A stretch of 49,646 nucleotides of DNA, counting the filler, from Bipalium vagum (taxonomy: Eukaryota): NCBI GenBank assembly GCA_037834085.1. It is 2 parts of 2 records of this genome, joined end to end, with 100 filler letters (N's around TTAATTAATTAA, not from the genome) between each part and the next. Parts side by side here need not be neighbours in the genome. Positions count along the whole stretch, not along the records: positions 1 to 19,539 come from JBBMKC010000650.1; 1 more part is not named here. One strand, written 5' to 3'. Below, piece after piece: positions 3,072 to 19,539 of this stretch. How positions within the stretch are numbered: position 1 is the stretch's first letter; the number at the start of each line of letters is the position of its first letter. The notes under the pieces were generated by a model. It worked only from the letters and a program-made list of their open reading frames with translations. It searched no databases and was not told where the DNA came from. Made by a program: the position numbers and the translations under genes.

Positions 3072-6000
3072 ATGATGAAAAAAGTATCTTTCGATTTAGA
3101 AGTAAAAAATGAAGTTATGGAAATATGTATTTCATTATTAAAAGGTACGTATTTTATTTTTTAAAAATTATCCTTTAAAATGCACTTAAGTTTCTAATGA
3201 AAATGTAAACCCAACCAAACTTATCGACAAATTTGAGAAGTGTTTTATGTATATAAATATGCTAATAGACTTACAGAAGGGTATAAGTGTGATTGGTGTT
3301 TATTTGATTAATAAGAATAATTAACAGATTATTCTTTTATAAATTCTCAGAAAAATAAATCCGGTTATGATGATCGTGAATATAAATCCAAAGAGATGTT
3401 TAATGACTACAAAAACAAGGGCTTAATTTCTAAAGTATTTATTTCAAATTCAAGAGTGACCAAAGGATTGGGTTTATTTGCAAGAGAGCCAATTAACGTA
3501 GTTGTATTCAACTTTTTTATTATTTTATTAAATCCTTAGAAATATGAACTTACAATGACCATACCAGCTGGTGAGATGATCACCGAATTTGAATCATACT
3601 CATCGATATTTGGTTAGTGTTTAAAATTAATAAGCATAATTATAAATTTCAGGTGAATTTTTGCATTCGAATGACATCACAAAATCCATGCCAAATATAT
3701 CTCTTTCTCTCTATCTGTTGAATGAATATATTGGAAGAAATTCCGTGCATGAAAACTACATAAGTCTGTTTGTTACAGCAGATAATAATTTTACGATCTA
3801 AATTAGAATCAATGCCTTTAATTTTGGATACCTTTTTATATTTGAAACCTGAAGACATTCGGTTACTACGACACTCTCCGTATTTGTGTAAGTATTTATT
3901 GATCATTTTATTATTATACGAAATATCCATTTATAAATTAGTGAACAGATATCAAAATGCACATGAAAATATTGAAATTTATCTTATCTAATGAAACTAT
4001 TTCTTTATTGATAATATTTTCTCTTAAATTATGAATCTTGTCAGGAGTTCGCAACTCGTGGGTCACGAATCTAAATAAAGTCGAACTTTGTTTTTTGTGT
4101 GGTCGCGAATAAATTTGCAAAAAAAACAACGTACCATTTTTACTGTATATTGTTTGAAAGTTGATTTTCTCTTCATAGTACCACTGGTTCTACCTTGATA
4201 CTCATGACCAAATCAATGCGTTTTTTTTGCAAGCTGTCACAATTAATAAAATGCATTCAGTAATTCTGTTTTCCTGTTGGTATCATTGCTTCTTCCTCTC
4301 TGCAATATATCATTACCTCGTGATTTAATTGATCTCGTACTTATAAGGAATCATTTTTAAACTTCTGCTTACCATAAAATTCAGTCTGAAACCTTTGCTC
4401 ACCAAATTTATTATGAATAAAAATAAATTCTTTTTTCGAATCGTTAGTAAAATGGGTTGAGTATCACTAGTAAATATTACGGTTCTCTTCGAATTGAAAT
4501 CTTTTTTTGAAACAGAATTAATCAACATCTTTATTATTCTTCATAATAGAAGAAATATCAATTCAATTAAATTTAGTTAAATATTGTTCATTGAGTCTAA
4601 TAAAATGAGAAAAATTTTGAAAAGAAATTTTTCATTTCAATTGAAATTATCAAATCACATTATTTGAGTATAATCGAATTTTTTGTGAATTGTATCTTCA
4701 GTCTTAGATTTTCTTAATTTTATTTACCAACAAGTTTATTTTAATGCACGTTTTACTTTTTACTTAACCTTTTAAGATAAAAATCGTTATATATCAAATA
4801 AACAAAACCGATTTAAGCGGCTTTCTTTTGTGAAATATTTCAAATTGGAATAATAATAATCTGTCAGTCTGCAATTTTTGTGCATTTCAGTCAGGTTTTT
4901 GGAATTAGTCAGTGAATCTCACAGTTCACAGAACGATATCAAAACTTATCTCGCATTGATTGTCTGTGTGCTACTAAAAATACACGTGGGGCTCTATAGA
5001 ATAAAGTCAATTGGAAGATTCCACATTTCCGTATGAATCATCGTTCGTGTGTCTGCTGGATGGCATCAGTTCTCTAAATAAAATCGATCTGTTTGTATAA
5101 TAAGAAAATTTAGAAATTTAAAAAATCATTCGGTGTATATTAAATTATGATAAGTGAAGTCAATAAAATTCGGAAATACTTTGCTATTTTTATAGATTTC
5201 ATTCGTCTCTTTAACTTTTTTAACATTTTTTCTCTTTATTCAGTCATTTTAATTGTTTAATGATAATGAATTATGCTTCAATTTGAGTTTATTATACAAT
5301 TAAAAATTTTATATTGATTATATTTGATTATAATTAAATTAAGATAACCAATTTTTAAATGATTTCTAAAAAATAACTAAATTTAATCAATGGAAATTTA
5401 ATTTCATTGTTCAATAAAAATCAACAATTACTAAATAGTTATAAAGAAATTTAATACTCGATAAAAATTATATTTCGATATCTTGATTGCAAAAATCGGT
5501 TTCTCCATTTCCTTTTAGTCTTCGACTGTCACTTGTTAAAATATTGATTGTGGTCGTAATTTTTTTAATTGCAGTTCCGAAATTATCAATATTTTTCCGC
5601 TTCAGACGACATTGTTCAGCAGTATTCTTGCATGTGCTGTCATTATTGTTACTTTATGAGAACATTTTCGATGAGTAAATCAATCGCCGGCTGTTGGTTT
5701 CAAGAGGCTTTTTGTTTTGAAGATTTCAGGTTTGAGGACTGATGATACTTATAATTTCAAAATATTATTTTCTGTTCAGATGGGCTGTTTCCATAGTTAT
5801 GTCAAGAAACAATGCTATTCCATCAACTGATGGTTATTGGGAATTATTAATTTAGCCACAGAATTTAAATATCACTTTTTCAGGTAAATCGACGATGTTG
5901 GCTCTTGTTCCACTGTGGGACATGATGAATCACAAACACGGAGAGGTCAGTCTTTTTGTAAGCATTTGAAAAATCAATTGTCTATTGATTTCACGAACTG

Positions 6001-8615
6001 AGTTTGCGTATCTTTCAATTCTACTTTTCCAGATAACGACAGATTTCGATAATGAAAATTTATTGTTTTATGCCATGGAATCGTACGAACTCAATGACGA
6101 AGTGAGTTTTTTGTTTATTTTTATTGTTCAGTCAATTTTAGATTTTTGTTGCTATTTTAACTTGGAATAAAGGGTTTTCTTTAAAAAAAATTCATTTCAA
6201 TTGTGATCAAACTTTGAATGGGAATTTGATTGATTTAAATCATTTTAAAAATGACCTTGAAATTGTTTCCTTCATCAAGAGATAAATATTATTTTATGAC
6301 TCGGTTCCAATCTCTAAATCATTTCCTCAATTTTGTAGATTTTGGACAGACTTTGTTTAAGAAGACAACTTTAAAATGTCTGTCTGTTCTAATTATTTTA
6401 TTATCAGTTTTATTTCAATTCAGAACTAAGTGGGTAGAAGAAAAAACAAGTTTGTATCGAAAAAAGGTTGGAAACACTGGTTTCTATAATTTTATTTTGA
6501 AACAAGAAAATGCGGTATTAAAAATTAATTAAATTGTTACATCTTGATTTTTTAAATTTATTGATTGAATATAATTTTTCATAATAATAATAATAGATAA
6601 TTTTATAATTTATCTGTTTTACAAATGAACTAACGCGTTTATCATTATATAAATCTCCATTTTAAATTCATTCAATTTTTTCTTTTATTGTCTTCGAATT
6701 AATCTGTTCCTTTCACATATCATTGCTCACTCGGAATTGAAAATTTTTAGTTTTAACTTTTCATTAAAAAATAAATAAAAAGTTGTGATTATCATTCATC
6801 AATTCTTTGTTTGAGATATAAATGGTAAAACGCAATATTCTCTTCAGATTTGCATGGATTATGGAAAGCGGACAAATTTCCAATATTTCATGTATTCGGG
6901 ATTTGTACCAGAATTAAACCCCCACGACAAATATAAACTGCTTCTCTGTAAGTTGCAATTGAAACAAAAATTATTGGTATATATATATATATGGTTTGTT
7001 ATTAGCCTTTAACAAGAACGATGGGCTGTTTCAAATGAAACAGAAAATTCTGTCCAAGTTATCAATCGATTGGTAATTTTAATACTAAAAACCTGTATTG
7101 TATCAAATTTTGTAATTTTCAGTGAAAATCCAACGTTTATGGTTGATTGTAACACATTTGAGGTCTTCACCCGTGATTTGGTCATCTATTTGTCAGTTAT
7201 GTTAAATAGAGACGGTAAGGTCAAATGGAAATTGGGTTTTTTTTTTAAATATTCGAGTTTATTTTATGACAAAACCACATCGGCAATATAATGTTCAATA
7301 ATATTTTCTTGTAACATTGAAAATATTACGTGAAATGGAACCGTTGCTAATGTAGAATTTCTGTCATCACATAATTCAAGATTTTTATTTAAAAAACTGT
7401 TGGTCAATATTTTAATTTTTTCAGGGTGATAATCAGTTCTTGGGAACTAGTGTCTGTACCAATACGCTTCTTTTTTAATTTTTTATACCAAATTGTCTCG
7501 TCATTTCGCAACAACCAAGAATTTGAAATATATCGAACGTTGAGTTTCAACGGAGAATATAACACAAAATTATCGATCAATTTAAATCAGACGAGTAAAA
7601 TTATACTGTGCTGTCTTTATCGTCGTTGCACCTACATAAAACACAAGTCTGTCAGATATTCCACAGATTAAAATGGGTGCCTGTGGCTTTGTGCATTCTA
7701 GTTTCTGGGTAATCGAGCTCAGGTTCGATTTTCATTGATAGGCGCTAAACGATTCTTTCCTAATTTGTACTTTTGAATTAAAAAATTGTGCTTTAACAGT
7801 CTCTGATGTTCTGTACCCCAATTCCATTCATTAAAGAAAATTCGATTTTATTAAATTTGTATATTTATCATTGAAAAAATTTTAAAATTATGCCAATATC
7901 TAAACCAATAATATTACAAAATAAAAAAATTAATATTTTAAATTTATTTGTCTTAGACATTACTTTTTATGATGACTCGAATGAGACAAAACAGTTCAGA
8001 AACATAACAAATGTTCTATTAATTGATTTTTATATAAATATTTTAACTATGGTCTTTTTTGTTGGCACAATTTTCTATTGGCCTTCATATTTAACGAGAA
8101 GAATTAAATAATTTTTTAAAAAGAATCGATTATTAATATTTAGTGAGAGGTGTCAATTTGGACCTCCAAATCATTTTTACATCGCTTGTTCTAACTGGTC
8201 TCTTTAAAAGAGTAAGAATCATTGAAATGATTTTGTTCCCAATAAGACTACATTGTTTTTATCATTAAAAAGTGGATAGAAACCAGTACGAGTCTGAGAT
8301 GCTTTTATAACTTTCTTATAGGCAAAATGCTCGATCAATTTCTTCTTTCTCCGACCATGGAAGCGGATATAATGAAGTATTCAGAAACTGCTAAAGGTGA
8401 TATTAGGACTTTTGTTGAAAATCGATTAAAAATCAATAAAAAATGCTTTGACACAAATCTGGAAAAAGTTGTTCTCATTTCGTTTTGATATATTAATTTA
8501 TTGACAGTTAAAACAATTGATTCAGTTGACTTCCGATGAAGATCTGTTGGCAGAACGATTTCTCAGTTACGAAAAGAGAGTCGTAGAAAAAATCTTGGAA
8601 AAATGTCATGCTTAA
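3072..8615 (+). CDS. SETD3: SET-domain protein, SETD3-like actin-histidine N-methyltransferase (15 exons, ~472 aa)
   Basis: Manually spliced GT-AG exons 3072-3144, 3191-3280, 3328-3497, 3540-3612, 3653-3763, 3807-3887, 5606-5729, 5780-5832, 5884-5945, 6033-6101, 6848-6947, 7006-7072, 7123-7214, 8322-8467, 8508-8615 give an open 1419-nt frame. Motifs GLGLFAREPI, FCFEDFRWAVSIVMSRNNAIPSTDGKSTMLALVPLWDMMNH and ICMDYGKRTN...YSGF align with recalled SETD3 (FTYEDYRWAVSSVMTRQNQIP...LALIPLWDMCNH). Confidence 0.88.
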
Positions 8616-8933: not shown

Positions 8934-9966
8934 CTAGGTCGTTCTAAAAGTCCCTAGTCTAAAAAACAAAAAATTTTTCAAGACATGAACCAGTTTTATT
9001 ATTCAACATAGTCTACTTTTAAGTGGATACATCGTTTCCATCGACCTTCAAGTTTTTTATAACCTCTGAAAAATAAGATTTCTCCAACCCTTGAAAATAT
9101 TCTGTAGTTTCAGCCATGACTTCACCACTTGTGTACGATGGATTTGAAAGCAAATCATAGTGCAATTCGTGTATTTTAGCGTTGAAATTACACTTTGATG
9201 AAGTGGTGGTCTTTTTCCTATGATTATATTACTTAATTGATCAAATAATCTTACATAATATTGTCCACTATATTGTTTTCCACTTTTTAAGAAATTCAAG
9301 GAATTAATATTCCATGGGTGTCCCTAAAACATTGCCAGAATCTTTTCAGCTGACTGTCGTTTGGAGCACTTACCGGGTCCTACCCATTGCTTTGTCTGTC
9401 GTGAAGATTCCGCTGTATAGTTATATATTCACATTTCTTTAACGGTTATATATTCATTTGGATTTCCATTAAAAACGCCTAAACACAACTTTGAATCATT
9501 AACTCCTTGCTTTTGATCGATTATCAAAGAGAGCGGCACCCATTTTGTGACAAGCTTTTTCATTTCCAATTCATCTTGAATTATTTACTGATATCTTTAC
9601 GAGTTTATGTAACTCGTAGATTTTGATTTTCGATCATTCATAATTGCTTCATTGACTTTTTGAATGTTCTTTGGCACCTCAATTGGGCGGCTGTTTCGTT
9701 CAGCATCATCTGTGCTTATACGACCGCGTTTAAATTCAGTGAACCGATTTCTTATCGTTGAATACGAAGCAGCAGAGTCGCCAAAATGTTTATCCAGTTT
9801 TCTTTCACCTTTTTCATCTAAAAAATCAGAACTGGGTATGTAATTTTAATGTTAGTGGATAATTTTAAAAAATTGGTAGATTTCATTAATGTTTGGAATT
9901 TCATAAACAACACTTTGGGTAATTTTTTACTATTAGTGATTTTTCATTTTCGGGTCAAGGACCTAG
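8934..9966 (-). mobile_element. Degenerate mariner (Himar1/irritans-like) element
   Basis: TA-flanked ends (ta|CTAGGTC ... GACCTAG|ta). Frameshifted minus-strand translation gives LDKHFGDSAASYSTIRNRFTEFKRGRISTDDAER, KKLVTKWVP and FLKSGK..SGQYYVRLFDQL. Confidence 0.85.
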
Positions 9967-10286: not shown

Positions 10287-10729
10287 ACAAAAGTATGTTT
10301 GTAATTACCATTTTTTACAAATAAATTTTATTTTTTATTGTTTTAAAAAAAGTAATGAAAAAGAGAGTAGTATGTAAAACTAGACTTTGAGGACAGGACC
10401 CCAACTTTTTTATAAAAAAACCAGGCCCTGGGGGATAGGCCTAAAAATATATTTTGTCTAAATTAACATCTATATAAAAATCACGAAAAATATGAATTTA
10501 ATAATGATAAAAATATCTTATATAAAAACATTCAAAATGTATAAAATATGCCAAATAATTAAAATATTTTATCACAAAATTCAGGGTTCTTTTTTATAAA
10601 AAAGAAAATGGGAGTCCTCTTCTAAAAGTTTGGTTTTGCATACTACTCTCTTTTTCATTACTTTTTTTAAAACAATAAAAAATAAAATTTATTTGTAAAA
10701 AAATGGTAATGAGAGAAACATACTTTTGT
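10287..10729. repeat. Long inverted repeat (arms ~145 bp, spacer ~150 bp) at the left edge of the Polinton-like region
   Basis: 10287-~10430 is the reverse complement of ~10582-10729. The core ATTACCATTTTTTACAAATAAATTTTATTTTTTATTGTTTTAAAAAAAGTAATGAAAAAGAGAGTAGTATG is matched almost perfectly. Confidence 0.9.
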
Positions 10730-10989
10730 GACTTTGTAAAAAATATATTTCAATACCTAATAAAAAAACACTAAAATCCATACATTTAAAAGTATGAATG
10801 AAAAAAGTATCATAAGTATGAATGAGAATGAAATTCAAAATTTCCAATTTTTTTCCTATCTAAAGTTGGAGGTGACAGTTTAAGTCTCAAATAACAAACA
10901 ACAAATTTTTAGATAAATTCACGACAGGAAATATCCAGGTGAATTACATTTAAAATCTTTAAATCCTTTTAACAAAACAAACCGAGTTC

Positions 10990-11425
10990 CAACTTTAGAG
11001 TACCAGGCTCACATATAAATACACGTTTAGAAAATTATGAAGAGATAGTAAATAATTATAAAGAAACAGAAGAACTAAATATCCCTCAAATTCCAATAAA
11101 TCAAATAGATCAAGCAGCAATGAATCATGATGTAAAATATATGTCAACAGATATAAAAGATCGACATATTGGAGGTGTTGAAATGATTCATAAAATGAAC
11201 AACATTCAAAATCCAACTCCAAGAGAAAAACTTGAAAGAGCAATTGTAAAATTAATTATGAAGAGCAAGAATGCTCTAGGAAGGGCGGTGCCGCTCAAAC
11301 CAAAAATTGCTTTAGGATTAGGTTTACCACGAGCAACAAAAAATATTGAACCTTTGTCTAGAGCAACAAAGTTTCTCACTAATGAAAAACTATTTGAAAA
11401 CTCAAAAATCATTCCAAAAAAATAA
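10990..11425 (+). pseudogene. Parvovirus-type phospholipase A2 domain (Polinton/adintovirus PLA2), frameshifted
   Basis: FRVPGSHINTRL ... PINQIDQAAMNHDVKYMSTDIKDRHIG.VEMI fits the PGT..RL / P.N..D.AA..HD..Y...R pattern of viral PLA2, followed by LGLGL. Confidence 0.75.
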
Positions 11426-11590
11426 AATTCTGTAAAAGAACTTCATAAAGAATTCAGAAAACTTAAGATTTTCTTAAAAGTAAAAGTTTTTAATAAAGAT
11501 GATATTTGGTCTGCAGATTTAACTTTTGTCCCTGGAGAAAGAGATTATAAAATAATTCTAAGAGTTATCGATTTATATTCTCGTTTTTTT
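11426..11590 (+). pseudogene. Polinton c-integrase (rve) N-terminal fragment
   Basis: VKELHKEFRKLKIFLKVKVFNKDDIWSADLTFVPGERDYKIILRVIDLYSRF matches the Polinton integrase ELHK..R...V...DD.W.ADL....YK.IL.VID..S pattern. It is truncated by unrelated sequence at ~11590. Confidence 0.85.
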
Positions 11591-12123
11591 TACCGTTCTT
11601 TTCACTGACGTCATTTATTATTGATTTCATGATATTATTTTTATTTTAATGTTTTTTATCATATTTCATTATTATATCAATTTTATTATATTTTTTCAAT
11701 ATTTATGGATATTATTAAATTGATTTCATTATGTTACCATTTGATTGATTCGCTTTAATCCTGTCATTTTTGGGGATTTTATTGCCATATGTTATACTTT
11801 TCAATATGCCACCCACTATTGTAGGTTGTTTTCGTTTTTATATGTAATGCCATATGTTATAATTTATTTTATTTGTATTTCGGGATTTTAAACGTCGCCT
11901 ACTGCCTTCTTCAAGTATTATTATTATTACTTAATTTAATATTATTGTTATACCCTTTTTAGGTTGCGCTTTACTTTGTGGTACAATTTTGTTTGATGAA
12001 AGAAAGTTGTAAAAAATAACAATATTTGATGACATTGCGATCCTCTTCAGATTTTTCTCTTTTTGTTTGACGACTCTCACAGAAATAAAAGATAAAATAG
12101 ATGAAAAACCTGAAGAATAAAAA

Positions 12124-12290
12124 TCAGATGGAGTTCTACCATTAATTCCGATTCTTGGAGAAATATTTTCTGGTTTAGGAGCAGTTGCTGGAGGAGTTGC
12201 AACAGCGGTTCAGAAAGCAAAAGAATCCAAAAAAATAATGCAGAGAAAGAAAAGATTGAAGTGGAAAAACTTAAACCCAAGACGAGCTAA
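12124..12290 (+). pseudogene. Adenovirus pX-like hydrophobic peptide of a Polinton/adintovirus virion protein (fragment)
   Basis: Translation SDGVLPLIPILGEIFSGLGAVAGGVATAVQKAKE resembles the GG(F/V)LPL...GA.AGG.A motif of pX-like domains. Confidence 0.6.
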
Positions 12291-13496
12291 AGCTGTCGAT
12301 CCTTATTTTGGAAAGATACAATTCAATATCTCAGAAGAAAAAATTTTTTAAAAACCTGAAAAAAAAAGGTATTACAAAAACTTTATAAAAATAAACTGGA
12401 AACCATAAAACAAGAAAATTGATTATATTTTGATTTTTATGAGAAAAAACAACTTTCCCAACTTCAAAACAAGTGAAAAGCAATGCTTAGAATCAGAAAA
12501 TATATTTTTAAATGTTACTGGTAATGAAATGAGTAAATGTAAGAGAACCAAATGATAACGATGTTGTAAATTTAAAGTATAGGAAACAAATTTATTTAAT
12601 GCAATTAGTATATATAAAATTATTGGTAAAACACAATTCTTTTATTTAATATTCGAAATCAACTAAAAATATAGAAAAAATTGAGAGCGAATTAGCACTA
12701 CGTAACCCTGAAGATCTAAAAAAATATCAAAGATATAAAATTTGCTAAGAATATGAAAAATTTAGAACACAATTTTTATCATATATTGAATCATTTTAAA
12801 ATGTCAAACTGAAGATTCTGATAGAAAAGATTTCAATAGAAAACAAACTTAAATAACGCAATAGTAAATATAATAAAAGAATCTGAAGATGTTCAGAAAA
12901 TTATAATTCGTCGGCTTCGCAACCGACGTTTCGCACTCTTATAGAAAATATAAACAGTTTCGGATATTTTGATTTTGATATTTAAATTGATATATTGTTA
13001 AAATAAAATTGAAAACCACTGTAATAGTATTAATTTTATAGTATTAATGATAATCATGTTTTTGGTTGGTATCTTAATATTTTAGCGTTATTTATTATTA
13101 TATATTTATGATGTTATGGAAAAACTATTGTTCTAGAAAAAATATCTAAAGGAATAAGTCACTAAATCTTAATACGTATTCAACAATTTTCCAATCAATG
13201 ATTATGAATATAAAAAGTAGCATACTTTAATAGTAAAAAAATATTTCATATTTTGCTAATTGGAAATAAAATTGATAAATAATATTTAAAATCCTATTAA
13301 TTTTTTAAGACCGTATCAAAAAATTATAAAACCCCTGTAGATGTTAAAAATTAAATAAAATTCAAAATATAGTTCAAAAAATATATTTATAAAGCAATTT
13401 CTGGATTCAACTCTTTACACTCTCCTTCTTGAATACCTAAAAAATAAATGAATAAATACTGCTTTAATTCATTTTTCATAATTTAAATTATATTTA

Positions 13497-13547
13497 TCAG
13501 GGTTAAAAAGCTAAAACAATCATTATCAAGATACAAAATTTCATCAA
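13497..13547 (-). ncRNA. SNORD36: Box C/D snoRNA, U36/SNORD36/snR47-like (18S Am guide), copy 1
   Basis: TTGATGA (box C) ... AGCTTTTTAACC-CTGA (box D). The guide is complementary to conserved 18S GUUAAAAAGCU and has the same 3' end as recalled U36 (GAGCTTTTTAACCCTGA). Box D lies 60 nt from the 3' splice site. Confidence 0.85.
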
Positions 13548-13698
13548 TAATATATATGTGTATATATGTATAAGTGTAAGTTTTGAAAAACATACCTCAG
13601 AATTTTTTTAACCAATTTGTCGTGCTCTTTTCCTAAAAAGAAAAGTTTCAAATAATATACTTAAATATTATGATAATTTTATCATTTTAATCATTTAA

Positions 13699-13748
13699 TC
13701 AGATTATATTTTTCATCAACTGAGCAGACAGGGATAACGATTCATCAT
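13699..13748 (-). ncRNA. SNORD1: Box C/D snoRNA, snR38/SNORD1-like (28S Gm guide), copy 1
   Basis: ATGATGA-ATC-GTTATCCCTGT-CTGC(D')-TCAG-TTGATGA(C')-AAAATATAAT-CTGA(D). The guide is complementary to 28S ACAGGGAUAAC. Confidence 0.85.
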
Positions 13749-13909
13749 TTTTTTCGTATTACATGAAATTGGTATCAAAAGTAAGCTTACCCTTTGGTGT
13801 TTGTATTACTGTAATTTGGAATTTTGACGAAATTGATGTTCAGTCTGGAAAATTAAATGAAAATTAATATGGCAACACTTTAATTGATAATCACTCAAGA
13901 AATGAGAAT

Positions 13910-13960
13910 TCAGGGTTAAAAAGCTTTAACTCTCATTTTCAAGTGTAATAATTTCGTCCT
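13910..13960 (-). ncRNA. SNORD36: Box C/D snoRNA, U36/snR47-like, copy 2
   Basis: AGGACGA (degenerate box C) ... TTGA(D') AA ATGAGA ... AGCTTTTTAACC-CTGA. Box D lies 65 nt from the 3' splice site. Confidence 0.75.
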
Positions 13961-14097
13961 TTTAATAATTGGTTAATAAATTAACAGCTACTCACCAAAA
14001 ACTATTGAGAACTTTGTCATTTTTGAGATATACCTAGAAATAATAATCAAAGTTAACTTAATAGCGCACTTTTCTTTATAATGAAAGATCATGAAAA

Positions 14098-14147
14098 TCA
14101 GAACAAAAATCACATCATCTTATCAGACAGGGATAACGATTCATCAT
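14098..14147 (-). ncRNA. SNORD1: Box C/D snoRNA, snR38/SNORD1-like, copy 2 (best consensus)
   Basis: ATGATGAATCGTTATCCCTGTCTGATAAGATGATGTGATTTTTGTTCTGA has perfect C, D' and D boxes and an 11-nt 28S antisense element. Box D lies 64 nt from the 3' splice site. Confidence 0.9.
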
Positions 14148-14272
14148 TTTTAATCATATTCGTATTACAATACAACTTACAATTTTTACAGGAACTGTGG
14201 CTTTTTACCTAAATAAAAATATCTAATTATATCGAAAATATCATATCAAATATTAATATTTAAATAAACAAT

Positions 14273-14324
14273 TCAGTGTTAAAAAGCTTTAACTCTCATT
14301 ATCAAGTTATGTATTTTTCATCCT
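14273..14324 (-). ncRNA. SNORD36: Box C/D snoRNA, U36/snR47-like, copy 3
   Basis: AGGATGA(C)-AAAATACATAAC-TTGA(D')-TA-ATGAGA-GTTAA-AGCTTTTTAACA-CTGA(D). Confidence 0.8.
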
Positions 14325-14499
14325 TTATACATACATAAATATAATACATATATTAATATTAAAAGGACATACTTTTGATGACTGCTGCATTAATTGCTTA
14401 TTCCAAAAAGTTTTCTGTGTAACCAGTTCCATTATTCTTCAGGTCCTATAAAAATATGATGATAAGTATTATTAAAAATAATGGACTAGATAAAACTTT

Positions 14500-14549
14500 T
14501 CAGATTATTATCTTCATCAGCTAAACAGACAGGGATAACAATTCATCAT
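14500..14549 (-). ncRNA. SNORD1: Box C/D snoRNA, snR38/SNORD1-like, copy 3
   Basis: ATGATGAATTGTTATCCCTGTCTGTTTAGCTGATGAAGATAATAATCTGA; D' is CTGT. Confidence 0.8.
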
Positions 14550-14594
14550 AAAAATTAAATGATTATATTTAAAGTCTATATTGGATAAAACTTT

Positions 14595-14644
14595 TCAGAT
14601 TATTATCTTCATCATCTAAACAGACAGGGATAACAATTCATCAT
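14595..14644 (-). ncRNA. SNORD1: Box C/D snoRNA, snR38/SNORD1-like, copy 4 (recent ~95-bp tandem duplicate of copy 3)
   Basis: Differs from copy 3 at a single position between boxes C and D; the offset is 95 bp. Confidence 0.8.
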
Positions 14645-14799
14645 ATAAAATAAATGATTATATTTTAAAAGTCAGTAGACCAAAAAATATATTTAATCAT
14701 TATTTCTATTTATTAATCATTTCATTTCAAAACTGATAGAAATAAAAGCTATATTAATAACAAAAAGTTATCACAATAATTATTTAGTCATGTTTAAGA

Positions 14800-14853
14800 A
14801 CAAGACAATAATTTTAGCTCAACAGTGAGCAGACAGGGATAACAATTCATCAA
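14800..14853 (-). ncRNA. snR38/SNORD1-like copy 5, degenerate (no terminal box D)
   Basis: TTGATGAATTGTTATCCCTGTCTGC is retained, but there is no CTGA at the expected box D position. Confidence 0.55.
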
Positions 14854-15989
14854 AATATACTAATTATTAGTCTAATCATTAAGACAAGTTACCTTTTCAA
14901 AATATATTTCTCTAATGAAATGAAGATATTTAAACAACTTTATTTGAAAATTTAAATTAAGATTTAAATCCTAGTCTTAAATTTTAAAATAAGCTATATA
15001 TTTAAGAATGTGATTGTGATTGAAATCTCAAACTCTCATAAATAATGTCAAAAAGCTACTGAATATCTTTCGTTTAGTAGGATCTGCAGAATATTATAAA
15101 ATACAAAAAAATATTGCTTGTATCATGCAAGTTAAAAATTTCCTTTCTAAATTATTCCATATTCTAATTTTAGAAGTCAATTTTTTAATTTTAAGTGAAA
15201 TTTAATTTATTTAGTAATAAAATGATTAAAATTTTTATGGACTATTTTTTTTAAAAATTATTTGACGTTTTATCTGAACTGATTCTAGCAATTCAATAAC
15301 AATTTCCATTTTAATTTTTTAAACAATCTCTTGTTATTCTGGTAATAATGAAATTTTCACCTCTACTTCGGCCCTTCCTAATTCTGCGAGGTTCTGCGTT
15401 GCTTGAAGTAATTCTTTGTTTATTGGTCCCGTTGAGTTCGATAGGTCAATATAACTGTTTCCTGCTAATCTTGGCTGTCCAAAATGGTCAACTTACACTA
15501 GCAATATTATCGTTTCCTCATCCGCACAATCCATTCCACAATCCGTTAGGTACTTGTCATTATCAACTGATAAATGCTACAAAATATTATAATAATCCAT
15601 TAATGACCCATCGTCTGAATTGCTCTTTCCCTTACTGTTCTCATTCTCGCGCAATAGTTCAAACTGAACTTATGATCCATCCATCCAATCTTTTTCAGTT
15701 TGATTTTAATCGGTCGCTGATCTACTCCTCAGCCGCGTGTATCTTCCTTACCCTCTTACTAGAGCTCTCATTTCTGCTTGTGGAACTCCAGACACACATA
15801 CTAGCACACATACCAGTTCGTTCGTCAAAAACGTGTTTACCAAAGTAGTACTCTATGTGTCGAAAAAGAATAATTTTTTTTTCTTAAAAAAATAACTAAA
15901 AAAAATAATTTTAAAAATTTTAAAAATCAAAAAATTTAAAACTGAAAATATATAATTTTCTTTTGAAAAATTTCTACTCGAAACACTGC

Positions 15990-18900
15990 AAATTCCCTCA
16001 TCAATCTTGATGAATGGAAAGCTATAAAAAGTATTTTACCTTTTGAAGAATGTTCTTTTCCTGTCGATTTATTTCATGATGGTTACAATCTAAGATTTTT
16101 AAGTTTTGAAGGTAATAAAATAACTTATTTAAATTCTTATTATTATAAAAAATATTTGGAACAGTTTATCAATTTAAAATTTCTCCGAAGGATGTTACAG
16201 AAAAGACCATTACTAATTGTTTAAATCGTATTGTAGAAACTATAACAAATAATAATGATAATTACATAATGTATAATAATAAGCTAACACCTTTACATCC
16301 TTTAATTTATATAGGATATAGTTGTTTTCCTTTATGTAAAAAAGATGAAGTAGTAAATCAATTATTTACAAGATTAGAAAAAATTTTACAATCAGAACAA
16401 ACTTTAAATATTGAAGATGTAATTTTTGAATTTTTACTTTTACCAATACCTCAAGAAAAAGGAAAATAACTACAGTGCACAACGGTTACATCGAAGTTGT
16501 GGGGAACTCCAAAATACTTCGATGTAACCGATACTTCGATGTAAACGAAAAAAATTTTAAAAAATAACATTTTAAACTATTTATTTATGAAAATAGTCGA
16601 TTAAAGTTTTCTGAATTGGTCGAGATTGTAGTATATCATTTTCCACAAGTTCTTCTACCTGTGACATTGTCGATTTTATATTGGTAGAACCGTAAAAGTC
16701 TTTGTTGGACAAAAATTTTAAGACAACTCTCAAGTTTGTCATCGCTTCTTTACTTGTAACCTGGATATTTAATTTGCTACGATGTAACCGGACTTCGATG
16801 TAAGCGTAGTACGATGTAACCATTGTGCACTGTATATTAATTATAGTGGAAATAATTCTAAAAATTTAATATTAAAAAATTTTGCACAGATTTCTATTAA
16901 CATAATTCAAATTAATTATACAATCTGTTTAGCAAGATCAATAATAACTTCTTTAACATATGATAACTTTACGAACAAAAACTTTTTAAAATTTGGAGAA
17001 CGTGAATATAGAATTAGATATATTAGAAGAGGTGATCCAATACAAGAAGAATGGGCAATAAAATTACATAATATGGCTCAAGTAGAAATTAAAGAAACTG
17101 GAAATAATATTGATGATTTAAAACAATTTGAAATTTTTTACAGTAAGAATTATAGTTTATTCTCATAATGATAATCAAGTGATTCTATTTTATATAGAGG
17201 AAATGAACCATTTGAAAAACACACTTTTACTTATTATGATCAAAAAAATCATCATTTTATTTCAATTACAAAAATAACAGCTTTTTTATAATCATTAAAA
17301 TATTGTAATAAATGTTTAATTGGATTTAAAAATCACCATACACGTAAAATAGATAGCTTATAAAATAGTAAATAATAGTTAAATAGTAAAATAGTTAATC
17401 TTATAGATATAAAAAAGTTTGTAATATTTGTAATGAAGAATATTTTAATTAATATCAACAGAAGTGTGGTTATAAGAATTGTCCAATTTGTAATGAACAA
17501 TACAAATTTGTACAAAAATATTTATGTCTATGATAGCTAATGAAGAAATTGGAATACCGAGATTAATTAATTTTTAAGATATATATTCTTATAAATGTAT
17601 TAATTGATTAGAATATTTAAGTAAAATTGGTAATATAAAAATTCAACATGAAAAAGAGGAGGAGAAGAATCAATAAGAGCTAATAATAAAAAAATATAAA
17701 GTTGACGGATTTTATTATGACCAAACTTCTAAAACTTATTATATTTATAATTATAATGGTTGTTATTTTCATGGTTGTTTAAAATGTTATAATAAAGATG
17801 AAGTTTGTAAAAAGGAAATGAAACAATGGAAATTTTAAATAATCGTACTTTATAAAAAAAGAATAATATTATAAAACATTGTGAAGATATAAATTTAAAA
17901 TTAGAATTATAGAATTATGGGAATATGAATATGAAAAGCTTTTAGCAAATCCTGATTTTAAAAATTTTAAAATTGATCCAGAATTATCTAAACTAAAACC
18001 AAAAGAAGCATTTTATGGAGAAAGAACTCAACCTATTCAATTATATCATAAAAGTGAAACTGAAAAAATCAAATATGTAGATTTTGTATCTTTGTATCCA
18101 ACTGTAAATAAATACGATGAATATCCAATTGGACATCCTAGAAAAATATTTAATATTTCACCAGAAGAATATTTTAAAAATGGTGTCATTAGAAATAAAA
18201 CCATTTCTAATGACAAAGCTACGCATAATTACTTTGGAGTTATAAAATGTAAAATTTTACCACCAAGAAATTTACATTTACCAGTCTTACCTTATAAACA
18301 AGAAATAGGAAATGCTCACAAGTTATTATTTGGATTATGTAAAACATGTATGGAAAAAATAAATATTAATTGTAATCACTATGTTAAAAGCAGTTGTTGT
18401 CCAAATATCGAAATTCAAGATCATAAAATAAATAGATGCAAAATCTGTATAAATAATAAATATAACTTAATTCATTCAAAAAGAAATTGTAAAATTTGTT
18501 ATAATTTTAGAAATGAAAAATGTAATCATAATGATGAAGAAAGATCTTTAATAGGAACATGGTCAACTATTGAAATAGATAACGCAATTGAAAAAGGATA
18601 TAAAATTGTAAAATTTTATGAAATAGAACATTTTGAAAAAACTAAAAAATTATGTAAGTATATTTATGAAATATAAATTGAAAGCCTCTGGTTGTAAATG
18701 TAAATATCATTCTGAAAATTTTTCAACAGGTTGTGATAAACATTGAAACGAAGATTGTAAATATGATAATAATTGTAATACAAAAATTGAATTCGAAGCA
18801 GAAAATATTGCTTATGATTTAGATATTGATAATATTAAATTTAATGCTGGTTTAAAATTTATGGCTAAAATTTGTTTAGTTAGTTTATCGGGACATTTTG

Positions 18901-19090
18901 GAATGAGAGATGATTTTGAACAATGTTCATTTGTTTATAATTATATTGATATTTGTAAAATAATATTTGATGACAAAATTAAAGAACCAAACCCAATTAT
19001 TTTAAATGAAGAAGTTTGGATGATGAAATATCATATAAAAGAAGAATGAAAAAATCCAAATAAAACTAAAAATATTTATATAGCATTAAT
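15990..19090 (+). pseudogene. Polinton/Maverick protein-primed DNA polymerase B, frameshifted
   Basis: YKVDGF...YNGCYFHGCLKCY (endonuclease-like insert), PKEAFYGERT, KYVDFVSLYPTVNKYDEYPIGHP (motif A), FGVIKCKILPP..LPVLPY, ERSLIGTWSTIEI, NAGLKFMAKICLVSLSGHFG (degenerate motif B) and NIYIA. Truncated before motif C; the 5' boundary is approximate. Confidence 0.9.
16473..16832 (-). mobile_element. Pogo/Tigger-type internally deleted element (360 bp) inserted into the PolB relic
   Basis: TA TSD; TIRs CAGTGCACAACGGTTACATCG / CGATGTAACCATTGTGCACTG; subterminal CTTCGATGTAA repeats. The residual minus-strand ORF ends in QKTLIDYF (PIP-box-like C terminus). Confidence 0.88.
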
Positions 19091-19129
19091 AAATTATAAA
19101 TTTAATTATAAAATTATAATTTTTTTCTT

Positions 19130-19539
19130 GTTTTAAATCCTTTATTATTTTTGTTTCATCTTCTTTAATTTTATCAGGAATCCATCCAAATAATTCTCCA
19201 TCATTATTTTTATCAATCATTATAAAATTAGTTATAGAATTTGATGAACCTAATTTTTGAATAGTTTCAACTTCTGTTGATCCTAATTTTAAAGTTGCAT
19301 ATGAAAATAAATAAAGAAAAAAGTTATTTTGTAAAGTTATATTATCTTCTGGTTTTATTCCTTTTATTTCAATGTCATAAATAAAATATGCTTCATATAA
19401 ATTTAAACGATTTGTTTTTGGTGTTATTATAAATGTTAAATTTCCATTATCATTTAAATTTCTAATTGTTTCTGGATCTAAACTTACTTCATAATAATCT
19501 GTTTTTTCATATGCTGTTTTTCGATGATAGTAATTTTTA
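19130..19539 (-). pseudogene. Polinton major capsid protein (double jelly-roll) N-terminal fragment
   Basis: Minus-strand translation EDNITLQNNFFLYLFSYATLKLGSTEVETIQKLGSSNSITNF...GELFGW resembles the Polinton MCP L.NN...YLF....L....E.I..G pattern. It runs into the gap. Confidence 0.6.

What the first reader, a model, noticed from the sequence alone, without database searches (positions are those of the whole stretch)
13390..14930. Hidden non-coding snoRNA host gene: tandem array of minimal snR38- and U36-type guides, one per intron
Seen: two short repeats (CAGACAGGGATAAC.ATTCATCA x5 and CAG.GTTAAAAAGCT x3). On the minus strand these read as box C + GTTATCCCTGT + D' and AGCTTTTTAAC + box D. 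Each lies in a GT-AG intron of mostly 147-164 nt, box D is about 54-66 nt from the 3' splice site, and the exons between them are 28-73 nt with no open frame in the one tested. Known: the guides match conserved rRNA sites (28S ACAGGGAUAAC, the snR38/SNORD1 target, yeast Gm2815; 18S GUUAAAAAGCU, the U36/snR47 target, yeast Am619/human Am668). Intronic C/D snoRNAs typically sit at about this distance from the 3' splice site. Inference: this is an unannotated UHG/GAS5-style host transcript that exists to release the two guides; in vertebrates these families use separate hosts.
Basis: partly seen in the sequence, partly recalled or inferred. Interest (0 to 1): 0.85.

Follow-up and report, generated by a model that had tools for sequence, protein, structure and literature searches.

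The report
Intron-borne snoRNA array, non-coding host
A 1.6-kb stretch on the minus strand looks like a small spliced gene with no protein of its own, whose introns carry repeated copies of two ancient guide RNAs that direct methylation of ribosomal RNA; this kind of gene is already known from flies, mammals and fungi.

Summary
GTTATCCCTGT occurs 5 times and AGCTTTTTAAC 3 times, all on the minus strand (0.01 and 0.04 expected by chance). Each sits in box C/D snoRNA anatomy. The A units (C box, guide, D', C', D; core exactly 50 nt) match Rfam snoR38 (snR38/SNORD1) just under threshold. The B units end with the same guide and D box as the snR47/SNORD36 consensus.

Box and guide columns never vary between paralogues, while the flanks are randomised. 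Five GT-AG introns of 147-164 nt each hold one unit. In six units box D lies 54-66 nt from the only acceptor-like site nearby. The exons (28-73 nt) give no ORF longer than 34 aa.

- A1 has lost C' and D and is dead.
- A2 and A3 are a recent 95-nt duplication and share one intron.
- The exon proposed between A1 and A2 has no credible donor.
- B1 and B2 have variant C boxes.
- The B units have lost the second (LSU) guide of U36/snR47.
- A decayed B copy lies upstream.

Best reading: a UHG/SNHG-type non-coding host gene, grown by tandem duplication of a two-intron module. Expression, splicing and methylation could not be tested. It is a new member of a known kind, of moderate to low interest.

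The parts
15005..15040 (-). Bx: decayed B-type (U36-like) remnant upstream of the putative first exon
   Evidence: 75% match to the B repeat (family D4). The alignment shows ATGAGAGTT retained while the guide and box D are mutated.
14893..14990 (-). Putative 5' exon; only its 3' end (donor AAAAG|GTAACT at 14892) is defined, the start is undetermined
   Evidence: Donor score and sequence. No clear TOP tract or unambiguous TATA box was seen.
14446..14892 (-). First intron (447 nt) holding A1, A2 and A3; alternative model splits it with a weak exon 14681-14748 (donor GTCTAC)
   Evidence: No donor scoring 5 or more lies between 14892 and 14372 other than 14892 itself.
14804..14853 (-). A1: dead snR38-type copy (box C and guide intact, C' and box D lost)
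   Evidence: Alignment. Rfam snoR38 gives only 20.3 bits. No CTGA lies within 70 nt of the guide.
14595..14644 (-). A2: snR38/SNORD1-type C/D core (50 nt), 149 nt from the 3' splice site
   Evidence: snoR38 36.8 bits. Core found by the C/D scan. Part of the 95-nt tandem duplication.
14500..14549 (-). A3: snR38/SNORD1-type C/D core (50 nt), box D 54 nt from the 3' splice site
   Evidence: snoR38 41.8 bits, E 5e-5.
14373..14445 (-). Exon, 73 nt; contains the ATG of the longest (34-aa) ORF
   Evidence: Pfam gave nothing significant.
14209..14372 (-). Intron, 164 nt (GTATGT...TTTAG) holding B1
14273..14324 (-). B1: U36/snR47-type C/D core, box C variant AGGAUGA, box D 64 nt from the 3' splice site
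   Evidence: SNORD36 21.7 bits.
14181..14208 (-). Exon, 28 nt
14034..14180 (-). Intron, 147 nt (GTAAGT...TTCTAG) holding A4
14098..14147 (-). A4: snR38/SNORD1-type C/D core with perfect D' (CUGA) and an AAAA/UUUU terminal stem; box D 64 nt from the 3' splice site
   Evidence: snoR38 41.3 bits, E 6.8e-5.
13996..14033 (-). Exon, 38 nt; contains the stop of the 34-aa ORF
13845..13995 (-). Intron, 151 nt (GTGAGT...TTCCAG) holding B2
13910..13960 (-). B2: U36/snR47-type C/D core, box C variant AGGACGA, box D 65 nt from the 3' splice site
   Evidence: snR47 27.4 bits, with the 3' end AGCUUUUUAACCCUGA identical to the consensus.
13791..13844 (-). Exon, 54 nt; distantly alignable to the 28-nt exon
13633..13790 (-). 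Intron, 158 nt (GTAAGC...TTTTAG) holding A5
13699..13748 (-). A5: snR38/SNORD1-type C/D core, weak terminal stem, box D 66 nt from the 3' splice site
   Evidence: snoR38 35.3 bits.
13596..13632 (-). Exon, 37 nt
13437..13595 (-). Intron, 159 nt (GTATGT...TTTTAG) holding B3
13497..13547 (-). B3: U36/snR47-type C/D core with canonical UGAUGA box C, box D 60 nt from the 3' splice site
   Evidence: SNORD36 24.4 bits against a gathering score of 30.
13330..13436 (-). Last exon; 3' end and poly(A) site undetermined in AT-rich sequence
   Evidence: Acceptor TTTTTTAG|GTATTC at 13437. No further C/D unit lies downstream to 12300.

Best explanation
The locus is a small multi-exon RNA polymerase II gene on the minus strand, from about 14990 to about 13330. 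Its exons carry no protein. Its purpose is to deliver box C/D snoRNAs from its introns.

Proposed mechanism (inferred):
1. Splicing releases each intron as a lariat.
2. The lariat is debranched.
3. Exonucleases trim it to the snoRNP-protected core.

A-type RNAs (A2-A5; about 50-nt core, about 60 nt when mature) use the 11-nt guide GUUAUCCCUGU next to box D'. They would direct 2'-O-methylation of the middle G in the LSU rRNA sequence ACAG(G)GAUAAC. This is the site of yeast Gm2815 and human Gm4362.

B-type RNAs (B1-B3) use AGCUUUUUAAC plus one nt next to box D. They would methylate the first A of the A-run in SSU rRNA GUU(A)AAAAGCU. This is the site of yeast Am619 and human Am668.

The array grew by tandem duplication of a module of about 400 nt made of B-intron, exon, A-intron, exon. 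A recent 95-nt duplication then produced A2 and A3. The 5'-most units (Bx, A1) have decayed.

What is shown: the sequence anatomy, the conservation pattern and the splice-signal placement. What is inferred: transcription, splicing, processing and methylation.
For: - Copy number is far above chance.
- Every A copy aligns end to end with Rfam snoR38. Boxes C, D', C' and D and the guide fall on the model's conserved positions. Scores are 35-42 bits with E 5e-5 to 2e-3 in the 1.9-kb search. They remain the top hits of the whole window.
- The 3' end of the B copies is identical to the snR47/SNORD36 consensus AGCUUUUUAACcCUGA.
- Purifying selection is visible. Among A3, A4 and A5, 0 of 30 box and guide columns vary. 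In contrast 13 of 20 other core columns and 57 of 60 flank columns vary (Fisher 2e-7 and 1e-18).
- Strong donor hexamers: 6 lie in 778 nt against 0.96 expected (P 5e-4). Five of them sit at the predicted exon ends.
- Each of six units has exactly one acceptor-like site 40-100 nt after box D, always at 54-66 nt. The background chance is 0.033 per unit.
- These introns are 147-164 nt, while two ordinary introns of the neighbouring SETD3-like gene are 51 and 87 nt. The difference is roughly a short intron plus one snoRNA.
- The longest ORF of the spliced model is 34 aa, and its stop lies upstream of three more junctions.
- Literature supports the target sites (PMC5199042, PMC3511168), the fifth-nucleotide rule (PMC10557570), the position of intronic C/D snoRNAs relative to the branch point (PMC5519232), and dedicated non-coding hosts (PMC4430873, PMC7154078, PMC2780460).
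- An unrelated metagenome locus, L008, shows snoR38 / SNORD49 / snoR38 in three consecutive GT-AG introns.
Against: - No unit reaches an Rfam gathering score. The best are 41.8 against 45 for snoR38, 24.4 against 30 for SNORD36, and 27.4 against 61 for snR47.
- Terminal stems are weak for A5, B2 and B3. MFE folds do not differ from shuffles, with z between -1.5 and +2.2.
- B1 (AGGAUGA) and B2 (AGGACGA) depart from the RUGAUGA box C.
- D' is CUGU or CUGC in three A copies.
- The 5' third is irregular. A1 is dead, A2 is misplaced, and there is no credible exon 2 donor.
- The transcription start, any TOP tract and the poly(A) site are not defined.
- The locus sits among transposon remnants.
- No expression data, no rRNA from this species and no orthologous locus were available.
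- The splice-signal statistics treat units as independent, although they descend from one ancestor.
Confidence: 0.75

Rival explanations
1. The snoRNAs are real and intronic, but the host is not a dedicated non-coding gene. The small exons would be untranslated exons of a protein-coding gene whose coding exons lie outside the stretch examined, or part of a longer transcript.
For: Neither end of the transcript is defined. An acceptor-like CTTCATTTCATTAG at about 14912 could make the '5' exon' an internal 19-nt exon. A GTAAGT donor lies upstream at 15496. Many snoRNAs lie in ribosomal-protein genes, for example SNORD36 in RPL7A (PMC3511933).
Against: No stop-free stretch with a Pfam hit lies on the minus strand within 1.5 kb either side. 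The six consecutive exons have no common open frame. No strong donor follows the last exon before 13225. Six introns in an untranslated region would be unusual.
Confidence: 0.1
2. The array is a decaying, silent paralogue, a duplicated or transposon-carried copy of the functional host gene that lies elsewhere in the genome.
For: Bx and A1 are dead. B1 and B2 have variant C boxes. D' boxes are imperfect and terminal stems are weak. The neighbourhood is rich in transposon remnants: polB type 2, an rve fragment and MITE-like inverted repeats.
Against: Box and guide columns are invariant while the flanks are randomised. This requires long purifying selection on these very copies. All five 3' introns keep consensus donors and acceptors at a constant distance. 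A recent 95-nt duplication retains intact boxes. No terminal inverted repeats enclose the array.
Confidence: 0.1
3. The locus is a polycistronic snoRNA cluster processed by endonuclease cleavage, independently of splicing, as in plants, trypanosomes or yeast clusters. The GT...AG pairs would be incidental.
For: A2 and A3 lie in tandem 95 nt apart with no exon between them. AT-rich sequence yields many weak splice-like motifs.
Against: Strong donors are enriched six-fold and alternate exactly with acceptors. The box D to acceptor distance is constant at 54-66 nt in six units. This has no role in splicing-independent processing, but it fits the splicing-coupled assembly of intronic C/D snoRNPs (PMC5519232).
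Confidence: 0.04
4. The repeats are chance matches, a satellite, or rRNA-derived fragments with no snoRNA function.
For: None beyond the low complexity of the region.
Against: Searches show 0 of 200 shuffles reach the observed counts. The complete C/D'/C'/D architecture is present. Selective conservation is seen. The sequence flanking the 11-mers does not continue the rRNA sequence as I recall it; no rRNA sequence was available to check this.
Confidence: 0.01

Closest known systems
Drosophila Uhg genes (Uhg1-5, 7, 8) and mammalian UHG/GAS5/SNHG genes
   Same: Spliced transcripts without a recognisable ORF, dedicated to snoRNA production. Uhg genes have many short introns, each with a single snoRNA (PMC4430873). 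They often hold several isoforms of one family. The exons are short and poorly conserved.
   Different: Only two families are present here, alternating in a duplicated two-intron module. The first intron holds three units, one of them dead. A 5'TOP start and Myc E-boxes were not identified. Expression is unknown.
Human SNHG16 with SNORD1A/B/C
   Same: A non-coding host whose introns release several isoforms of the same snR38/SNORD1 family (PMC7154078). The family guides the same LSU G (human Gm4362, PMC3511168).
   Different: SNHG16 does not host U36. The human snoRNAs are longer; the Rfam snoR38 model is 91 positions long, whereas the matches here span 64-65 nt, with 16-nt and 9-nt deletions relative to the model.
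SNORD36A/B/C (U36) in RPL7A; yeast snR47
   Same: The same 3' guide plus box D, AGCUUUUUAACcCUGA. The same SSU target, Am668 in human and Am619 in yeast (PMC3511168, PMC5199042). Several isoforms sit in successive introns of one host (PMC3511933).
   Different: The human host is a ribosomal-protein gene. U36 and snR47 also carry a D' guide for LSU Am3703/Am2220. In B1-B3 that spacer is not conserved and does not match the consensus guide.
Neurospora crassa UHG-like snoRNA clusters
   Same: One C/D snoRNA per intron in hosts with only short ORFs. The distances to splice sites are constrained (PMC2780460).
   Different: The family content differs. Those clusters are conserved with yeast, whereas conservation of this locus could not be examined.
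Metagenome locus L008 (contig MDSQ01088306.1), unidentified eukaryote
   Same: Two snoR38-family copies (one at 57.1 bits, above the gathering score) and a SNORD49 lie in three consecutive GT-AG introns separated by short exons.
   Different: The partner family differs (SNORD49, not U36). The snoRNAs are longer and the GC content is 38%. It is not a close relative of the window.

Membership tests
Box C/D snoRNA (general class) | Box C (RUGAUGA) near the 5' end and box D (CUGA) near the 3' end | tested here: met
   A2-A5 have AUGAUGA and CUGA exactly 50 nt apart. B3 has UUGAUGA and CUGA. B1 (AGGAUGA) and B2 (AGGACGA) deviate at one and two positions. A1 lacks box D.
Box C/D snoRNA (general class) | Short terminal stem bringing boxes C and D together | tested here: inconclusive
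   Stems of 4-6 bp are present for A2, A3 and A4. They are weak or absent for A5, B2 and B3. MFE folds do not differ from shuffles.
Box C/D snoRNA (general class) | Guide of at least 10 nt complementary to rRNA, ending directly at box D or D', with the target paired to the fifth nucleotide upstream | tested here: met
   The 11-nt guides abut D' (A units) or lie one nt from D (B units). This is the same register as the Rfam consensus sequences. The rule is taken from PMC10557570. The species' own rRNA was not available.
Box C/D snoRNA (general class) | Stable small RNA bound by Snu13/Nop56/Nop58/fibrillarin | not testable with these tools
   No expression or binding data are available.
Rfam RF00213 snoR38 (snR38 / SNORD1) | Score at or above the gathering threshold (45 bits) | tested here: not met
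   Scores are 41.8, 41.3, 36.8, 35.3 and 20.3 bits. The deficit comes from 16-nt and 9-nt deletions relative to the model. In one search, which scanned 20 of the 55 metagenome loci, nine of the eleven short-spacer (1-4 nt) units were covered, and none reached the threshold either.
Rfam RF00213 snoR38 (snR38 / SNORD1) | D' guide GUUAUCCCUGU + CUGA targeting the LSU G (yeast Gm2815, human Gm4362, Arabidopsis Gm2805) | tested here: met
   The guide is identical to the model consensus and in the same register. Targets are from PMC3511168 and PMC5199042.
Rfam clan CL00051: SNORD36 (RF00049) / snR47 (RF01203) | Score at or above the gathering threshold (30 / 61 bits) | tested here: not met
   B3 scores 24.4 and B1 21.7 against SNORD36. 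B2 scores 27.4 against snR47.
Rfam clan CL00051: SNORD36 (RF00049) / snR47 (RF01203) | D guide AGCUUUUUAAC + N + CUGA targeting the SSU A (yeast Am619, human Am668) | tested here: met
   Identical to both consensus sequences. Targets are from PMC3511168 and PMC5199042.
Rfam clan CL00051: SNORD36 (RF00049) / snR47 (RF01203) | Second (D') guide for the LSU A (yeast Am2220, human Am3703) | tested here: not met
   The spacers between box C and D' differ among B1, B2 and B3. They match the consensus GAAUUUCUUcac only partly. This guide appears to be lost.
UHG/SNHG-type non-coding snoRNA host gene | snoRNAs in introns of a spliced transcript, typically one per intron | tested here: met
   Five consensus GT-AG introns each hold one unit. 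The first intron holds three units. Splicing itself was not testable.
UHG/SNHG-type non-coding snoRNA host gene | No long or conserved ORF in the spliced RNA | tested here: met
   The longest ATG ORF is 34 aa and the longest stop-free stretch is 41 aa in a model of about 435 nt (local script). The 22-aa open piece of the 73-nt exon has no significant Pfam hit.
UHG/SNHG-type non-coding snoRNA host gene | 5'-terminal oligopyrimidine (TOP) start | tested here: inconclusive
   The transcription start is unknown. No uninterrupted pyrimidine tract lies upstream of the first donor. That TOP starts are typical of these genes is my own knowledge.
UHG/SNHG-type non-coding snoRNA host gene | Exons evolve freely while the intronic snoRNAs are conserved | tested here: met
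   Paralogous exons are barely alignable, while snoRNA boxes and guides are invariant. A comparison with orthologues was not possible.

The most novel reading that the evidence does not exclude
This may be a lineage-specific dedicated host in which one two-intron module was amplified in tandem. The module pairs a U36-type guide for the small subunit with an snR38-type guide for the large subunit. One transcript would then supply both guides in a near-fixed ratio. The snoRNA cores are pared to archaeal size (50-52 nt, with 11-14-nt spacers) in a genome whose ordinary introns are only about 50-90 nt. The array would turn over by birth and death: dead units at the 5' end, and a 95-nt duplication as the newest birth. 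Co-hosting of these two families was not seen in any of the 55 metagenome loci carrying the snR38-type guide.
Probability: 0.35. Interest if true: 0.4.

Novelty: new member of a known kind. Interest (0 to 1): 0.3.

Why it matters
If expressed, the locus supplies guides for two rRNA methylations that trace back to the last eukaryotic common ancestor (PMC3511168), in an AT-rich, short-intron eukaryote that I could not identify. It would add a compact example of how non-coding snoRNA hosts are built and renewed. The example shows module duplication, decay of 5' units and loss of one of the two U36 guides. It also gives annotators a ready gene model. It does not change what is known about snoRNA biogenesis or host genes.

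Tried and rejected
- Rfam at gathering thresholds found nothing in the window. Only the E-value mode showed the family matches.
- MFE folding of the eight units was uninformative, with z-scores between -1.5 and +2.2.
- Organism identification failed. The best relatives of the polB fragment are only 48% identical (Mytilus). Exact-product look-ups for two window ORFs and for P0047 found no record. Pfam on 20 stop-free stretches gave only polB type 2 and a weak rve match.
- The metagenome scan for box C plus the A guide returned 55 loci. None is a close relative, and none has the B guide on the same strand.
- Viral-contig scans were of no use. The B pattern gave 72 hits, all in viral contigs and of no help in finding relatives. 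The A pattern gave none.
- A C/D-looking candidate at 5922-6001 (+) from my own scan was rejected. Its 'box C' is the codons for WDMMNH of a SETD3-like exon, and the candidate spans an exon-intron boundary.
- A transposon carrying the array was considered. No inverted repeats enclose it.
- An exon between A2 and A3 was considered. There is no AG...GT pair that could define one.
The joined model was used only inside a local script to count ORFs. All exons except the 73-nt one are too short for an exon-by-exon protein search.
- The window was not taken for human sequence.
- Nothing was filled in for the N run at the end of the window, which was left as given.
- The polB remnant was described only, not mended.

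Full report
**1. Observation**

- GTTATCCCTGT occurs five times. The guide 5' ends are at 14843, 14634, 14539, 14137 and 13738, named A1-A5 here. The shuffle expectation is 0.01, and no shuffle out of 200 reaches five.
- AGCTTTTTAAC occurs three times, at 14288, 13925 and 13512, named B1-B3 here. The expectation is 0.04.
- The repeat finder recovers the same families. It also shows that A2 and A3 belong to a 95-nt tandem duplication with 95-96% identity.
- The window has 20-33% GC over 1-kb windows, about 26% overall. It holds no tRNA.

**2. Anatomy of the units**

A units:
- A2-A5 share one architecture with a core of exactly 50 nt: AUGAUGA (box C), 3 nt, GUUAUCCCUGU, CUG(N) (D'), 4 nt, (N)UGAUG(N) (C'), 10 nt, CUGA (box D).
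- A1 keeps box C and the guide. It has mutated C' (UGAGCU) and box D (CUUG), so it is a dead copy.

B units:
- B1-B3 read box C, 11-12 nt, UUGA, 2 nt, AUGAGA or AUGAUU, 5 nt, AGCUUUUUAAC, 1 nt, CUGA. The core is 51-52 nt.
- Box C is canonical only in B3 (UUGAUGA). B1 has AGGAUGA and B2 has AGGACGA.
- A fourth, badly decayed B-like remnant (Bx) lies at about 15005-15040, upstream of the first donor.

**3. Family assignment**

- Rfam finds nothing at gathering thresholds.
- In E-value mode the four intact A units are the best hits of the region and of the whole window. All are to RF00213 snoR38, at 41.8, 41.3, 36.8 and 35.3 bits against a gathering score of 45. E-values are 5e-5 to 2e-3 in the 1.9-kb search.
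- These alignments run end to end. Every box and the guide falls on the conserved model positions. The lost score comes from two deletions of 16 and 9 nt, so these RNAs are shorter than the seed members.
- B3 and B1 match SNORD36 at 24.4 and 21.7 bits (gathering score 30). B2 matches snR47 at 27.4 bits (gathering score 61). The 3' end AGCUUUUUAACCCUGA is identical to both consensus sequences.
- By the published tables, RF00213 guides Arabidopsis Gm2805, human Gm4362 and yeast Gm2812/2815. U36/snR47 guides SSU Am621/Am668/Am619 and also LSU Am2210/Am3703/Am2218-2220 (PMC3511168, PMC5199042).
- The methylated residue pairs with the fifth nucleotide upstream of box D or D' (PMC10557570). In the register seen here that is the middle G of ACAG(G)GAUAAC and the first A of the A-run in GUU(A)AAAAGCU.
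- The second (D') guide of U36/snR47 is not retained. The spacers between box C and D' differ among B1-B3 and match the consensus only in part.
- The 10-nt spacer before box D in the A units also varies, so both types are single-guide RNAs.

**4. Evidence for selection**

Among A3, A4 and A5, variation is distributed as follows (A2 was left out because it is a near-copy of A3):

| Columns | Variable |
|---|---|
| Box and guide columns | 0 of 30 |
| Other core columns | 13 of 20 |
| Flanking columns | 57 of 60 |

Fisher's test gives 2e-7 within the core and 1e-18 with the flanks included. Alignments of whole exon-plus-intron modules show the same picture. The snoRNA core and the splice sites stand out of otherwise randomised sequence. 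I set the functional columns from the general C/D architecture, but after seeing the alignment.

**5. Host gene model (minus strand)**

| Element | Coordinates | Length | Content |
|---|---|---|---|
| First donor | 14892 | - | AAAAG\|GTAACT |
| Intron | 14892-14446 | 447 nt | A1, A2, A3 |
| Exon | 14445-14373 | 73 nt | |
| Intron | 14372-14209 | 164 nt | B1 |
| Exon | 14208-14181 | 28 nt | |
| Intron | 14180-14034 | 147 nt | A4 |
| Exon | 14033-13996 | 38 nt | |
| Intron | 13995-13845 | 151 nt | B2 |
| Exon | 13844-13791 | 54 nt | |
| Intron | 13790-13633 | 158 nt | A5 |
| Exon | 13632-13596 | 37 nt | |
| Intron | 13595-13437 | 159 nt | B3 |
| Last exon | from 13436 | undetermined | |

- The five 3' donors are GTATGT, GTAAGT, GTGAGT, GTAAGC and GTATGT.
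- Strong donor hexamers number 24 on this strand of the window. Six of them lie within these 778 nt, against 0.96 expected (P about 5e-4).
- Each of A3, B1, A4, B2, A5 and B3 has exactly one acceptor-like site 40-100 nt after box D. The distances are 54, 64, 64, 65, 66 and 60 nt. The background chance of such a site in that 13-nt range is 0.033 per unit.
- The units share ancestry, so these are not six independent trials. However, their flanks have diverged to randomness, so keeping the signals implies constraint.
- The constant distance fits the known position dependence of splicing-coupled C/D snoRNP assembly, with human C/D snoRNAs about 50 nt upstream of the branch point (PMC5519232, PMC10557570). 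Neurospora and Drosophila show similar constraints (PMC2780460).
- Two ordinary introns of a neighbouring SETD3-like gene are only 51 and 87 nt. The host introns therefore look like short introns enlarged by one snoRNA.

**6. Coding potential**

- A local script that joined the exons found a longest ATG ORF of 34 aa. It starts at 14432 in the 73-nt exon and stops in the 38-nt exon. The longest stop-free stretch is 41 aa in a model of about 435 nt.
- The stop lies upstream of three further junctions. This is the arrangement that exposes UHG/GAS5-type RNAs to nonsense-mediated decay (an inference from my own knowledge).
- Exon by exon, only the 73-nt exon gives a peptide long enough to search (22 aa). 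It has no significant Pfam match.

**7.

- 'One per intron' holds for five units only.
- A2 and A3 share an intron because of the 95-nt duplication, and no AG...GT pair between them could define an exon. A2 therefore lies 149 nt from the 3' splice site.
- Removing the 95-nt duplicate from that hypothetical second intron gives 140 nt. The seven-intron layout is therefore probably ancestral, with the 5' part now degenerate.
- The order of units is Bx, A1, A2/A3, B1, A4, B2, A5, B3. The spacings are 399-413 nt between like units in the 3' part. This indicates tandem duplication of a two-intron module of about 400 nt. The 28-nt and 54-nt exons are still faintly alignable.

**8. Context**

- The array lies among mobile-element remnants. 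A type-2 DNA polymerase B (PF03175, 17885-18673 +) lies in a region broken into several stop-free pieces, and its best relatives are only 48% identical.
- Other remnants are a weak rve integrase fragment (11426-11605 +), a stretch at 9022-9845 (-) that looks mariner-like to my eye but has no Pfam hit, and MITE-like inverted repeats.
- No inverted repeat encloses the array.
- The organism could not be identified. The SETD3-like gene and the element types suggest an AT-rich, short-intron eukaryote, probably an animal.
- The window was not taken for human sequence.

**9. Comparison with other sequences**

- A metagenome scan for box C, 1-8 nt, then the A guide and CTG returned 55 loci with 28-71% GC. 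This guide architecture is therefore widespread.
- A gap of four nt or fewer between box C and the guide, against 3 nt here, is also seen in L004 (first unit), L018, L022, L024, L026, L030 and L051, so a short spacer is not unique to this locus.
- Several loci hold two or three tandem copies (L004, L005, L008, L012, L028, L033).
- None has the B guide on the same strand.
- In the Rfam scan of 20 of these loci, seven units pass the snoR38 threshold. None of the nine short-spacer units in the scanned loci does.
- L008 carries snoR38, SNORD49 and snoR38 in three consecutive GT-AG introns. This is an independent natural example of the same layout.

**10. Comparison with what is known**

- Drosophila Uhg genes have no recognisable ORF and up to 16 introns, each encoding a single snoRNA (PMC4430873).
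- Human SNHG16 releases SNORD1A, B and C from its introns (PMC7154078).
- SNORD36B and C sit in RPL7A (PMC3511933).
- Neurospora has UHG-like clusters with only short ORFs (PMC2780460).
- Drosophila snoRNAs are reported from 49 nt upwards (PMC13228274), so a 50-nt core is at the small end but not unprecedented.

The locus therefore works like, and most likely is, a UHG/SNHG-type host. Its particular features are the pairing of these two families in a duplicated module, the loss of the LSU guide of U36, and visible turnover of the units.

**11. Verdict**

- I put 0.75 on a functional, dedicated non-coding host.
- I put about 0.1 each on a coding or longer host and on a silent paralogue. A splicing-independent cluster gets 0.04 and chance repeats 0.01.
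- Transcription, splicing, small-RNA release and methylation remain inferred.
- Novelty: a new member of a known kind. Interest: 0.3.

Noticed in passing
window 5781-7009 (+): A SETD3-like (actin-histidine methyltransferase) gene. Its exons encode WAVSIVMSRNNAIPSTD, KSTMLALVPLWDMMNHKHGE, ITTDFDNENLLFYAMESYELNDE and a ...YGKRTNFQYFMYSGFVPELNPHD piece. Two of the pieces match PDB SETD3 chains collinearly (E 0.014 and 0.03). Its ordinary introns are 51 and 87 nt, one of them with a GTCAGT donor.
   Followed up: partly
window 15967-19046 (+), Pfam hit at 17885-18673: A type-2 (organellar/viral) DNA polymerase B, PF03175, E 4.7e-11. It lies in a region split into several stop-free pieces in different frames, so it is probably a broken Polinton/Maverick-like remnant. 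The best relatives are 48% identical (Mytilus). I described it only and mended nothing.
   Followed up: partly
window 19089-19538 (-): A 150-aa stop-free stretch that runs off the end of the piece, next to the polB remnant. It has no Pfam match and no meaningful PDB match. It could be another gene of the same element.
   Followed up: partly
window 10973-11605 (+) and 12121-12348 (+): A weak rve integrase core match (E 0.004, below threshold) follows a 150-aa open stretch. Further on is a 76-aa stretch with a glycine/alanine-rich hydrophobic segment. These may be pieces of another mobile element.
   Followed up: partly
window 9022-9845 (-): Several stop-free pieces whose sequence (for example ...FTEFKRGRISTDDAERNSRPIEVP...) looks to me like the N-terminus of a mariner-type transposase. 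Pfam gave no hit on the two pieces I tested, so this is my recollection only.
   Followed up: partly
window 10311-10420 / 10593-10702 and 1934-2048 / 2596-2709: Two MITE-like structures. The first has 110-nt inverted arms, 87% complementary, 172 nt apart. The second has arms of 64 and 51 nt, 91-94% complementary, about 550-650 nt apart.
   Followed up: no
window 15330-15850: A block of about 500 nt that looks richer in G+C than its surroundings by eye. It has a 166-177-aa open frame on the plus strand with no Pfam match. It lies just upstream of the snoRNA host, and its nature is unknown.
   Followed up: partly
window 12905-12945 (-): An isolated G+C-rich hairpin (CGTCGG...CCGACG with an 8-nt loop) in otherwise AT-rich sequence.
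   Followed up: no
L008:1000-1590 (-): A metagenome contig from an unidentified eukaryote. It has snoR38 (57.1 bits), SNORD49 (63.7 bits) and a second snoR38-type unit in three consecutive GT-AG introns.
   Followed up: partly
L004:666-736 (+): A unit carrying the snR38-type D' guide scores above the SNORD36 gathering threshold (32.3 against 30 bits). It may be a chimeric or dual-guide snoRNA. The same contig has two more snR38-type units.
   Followed up: no
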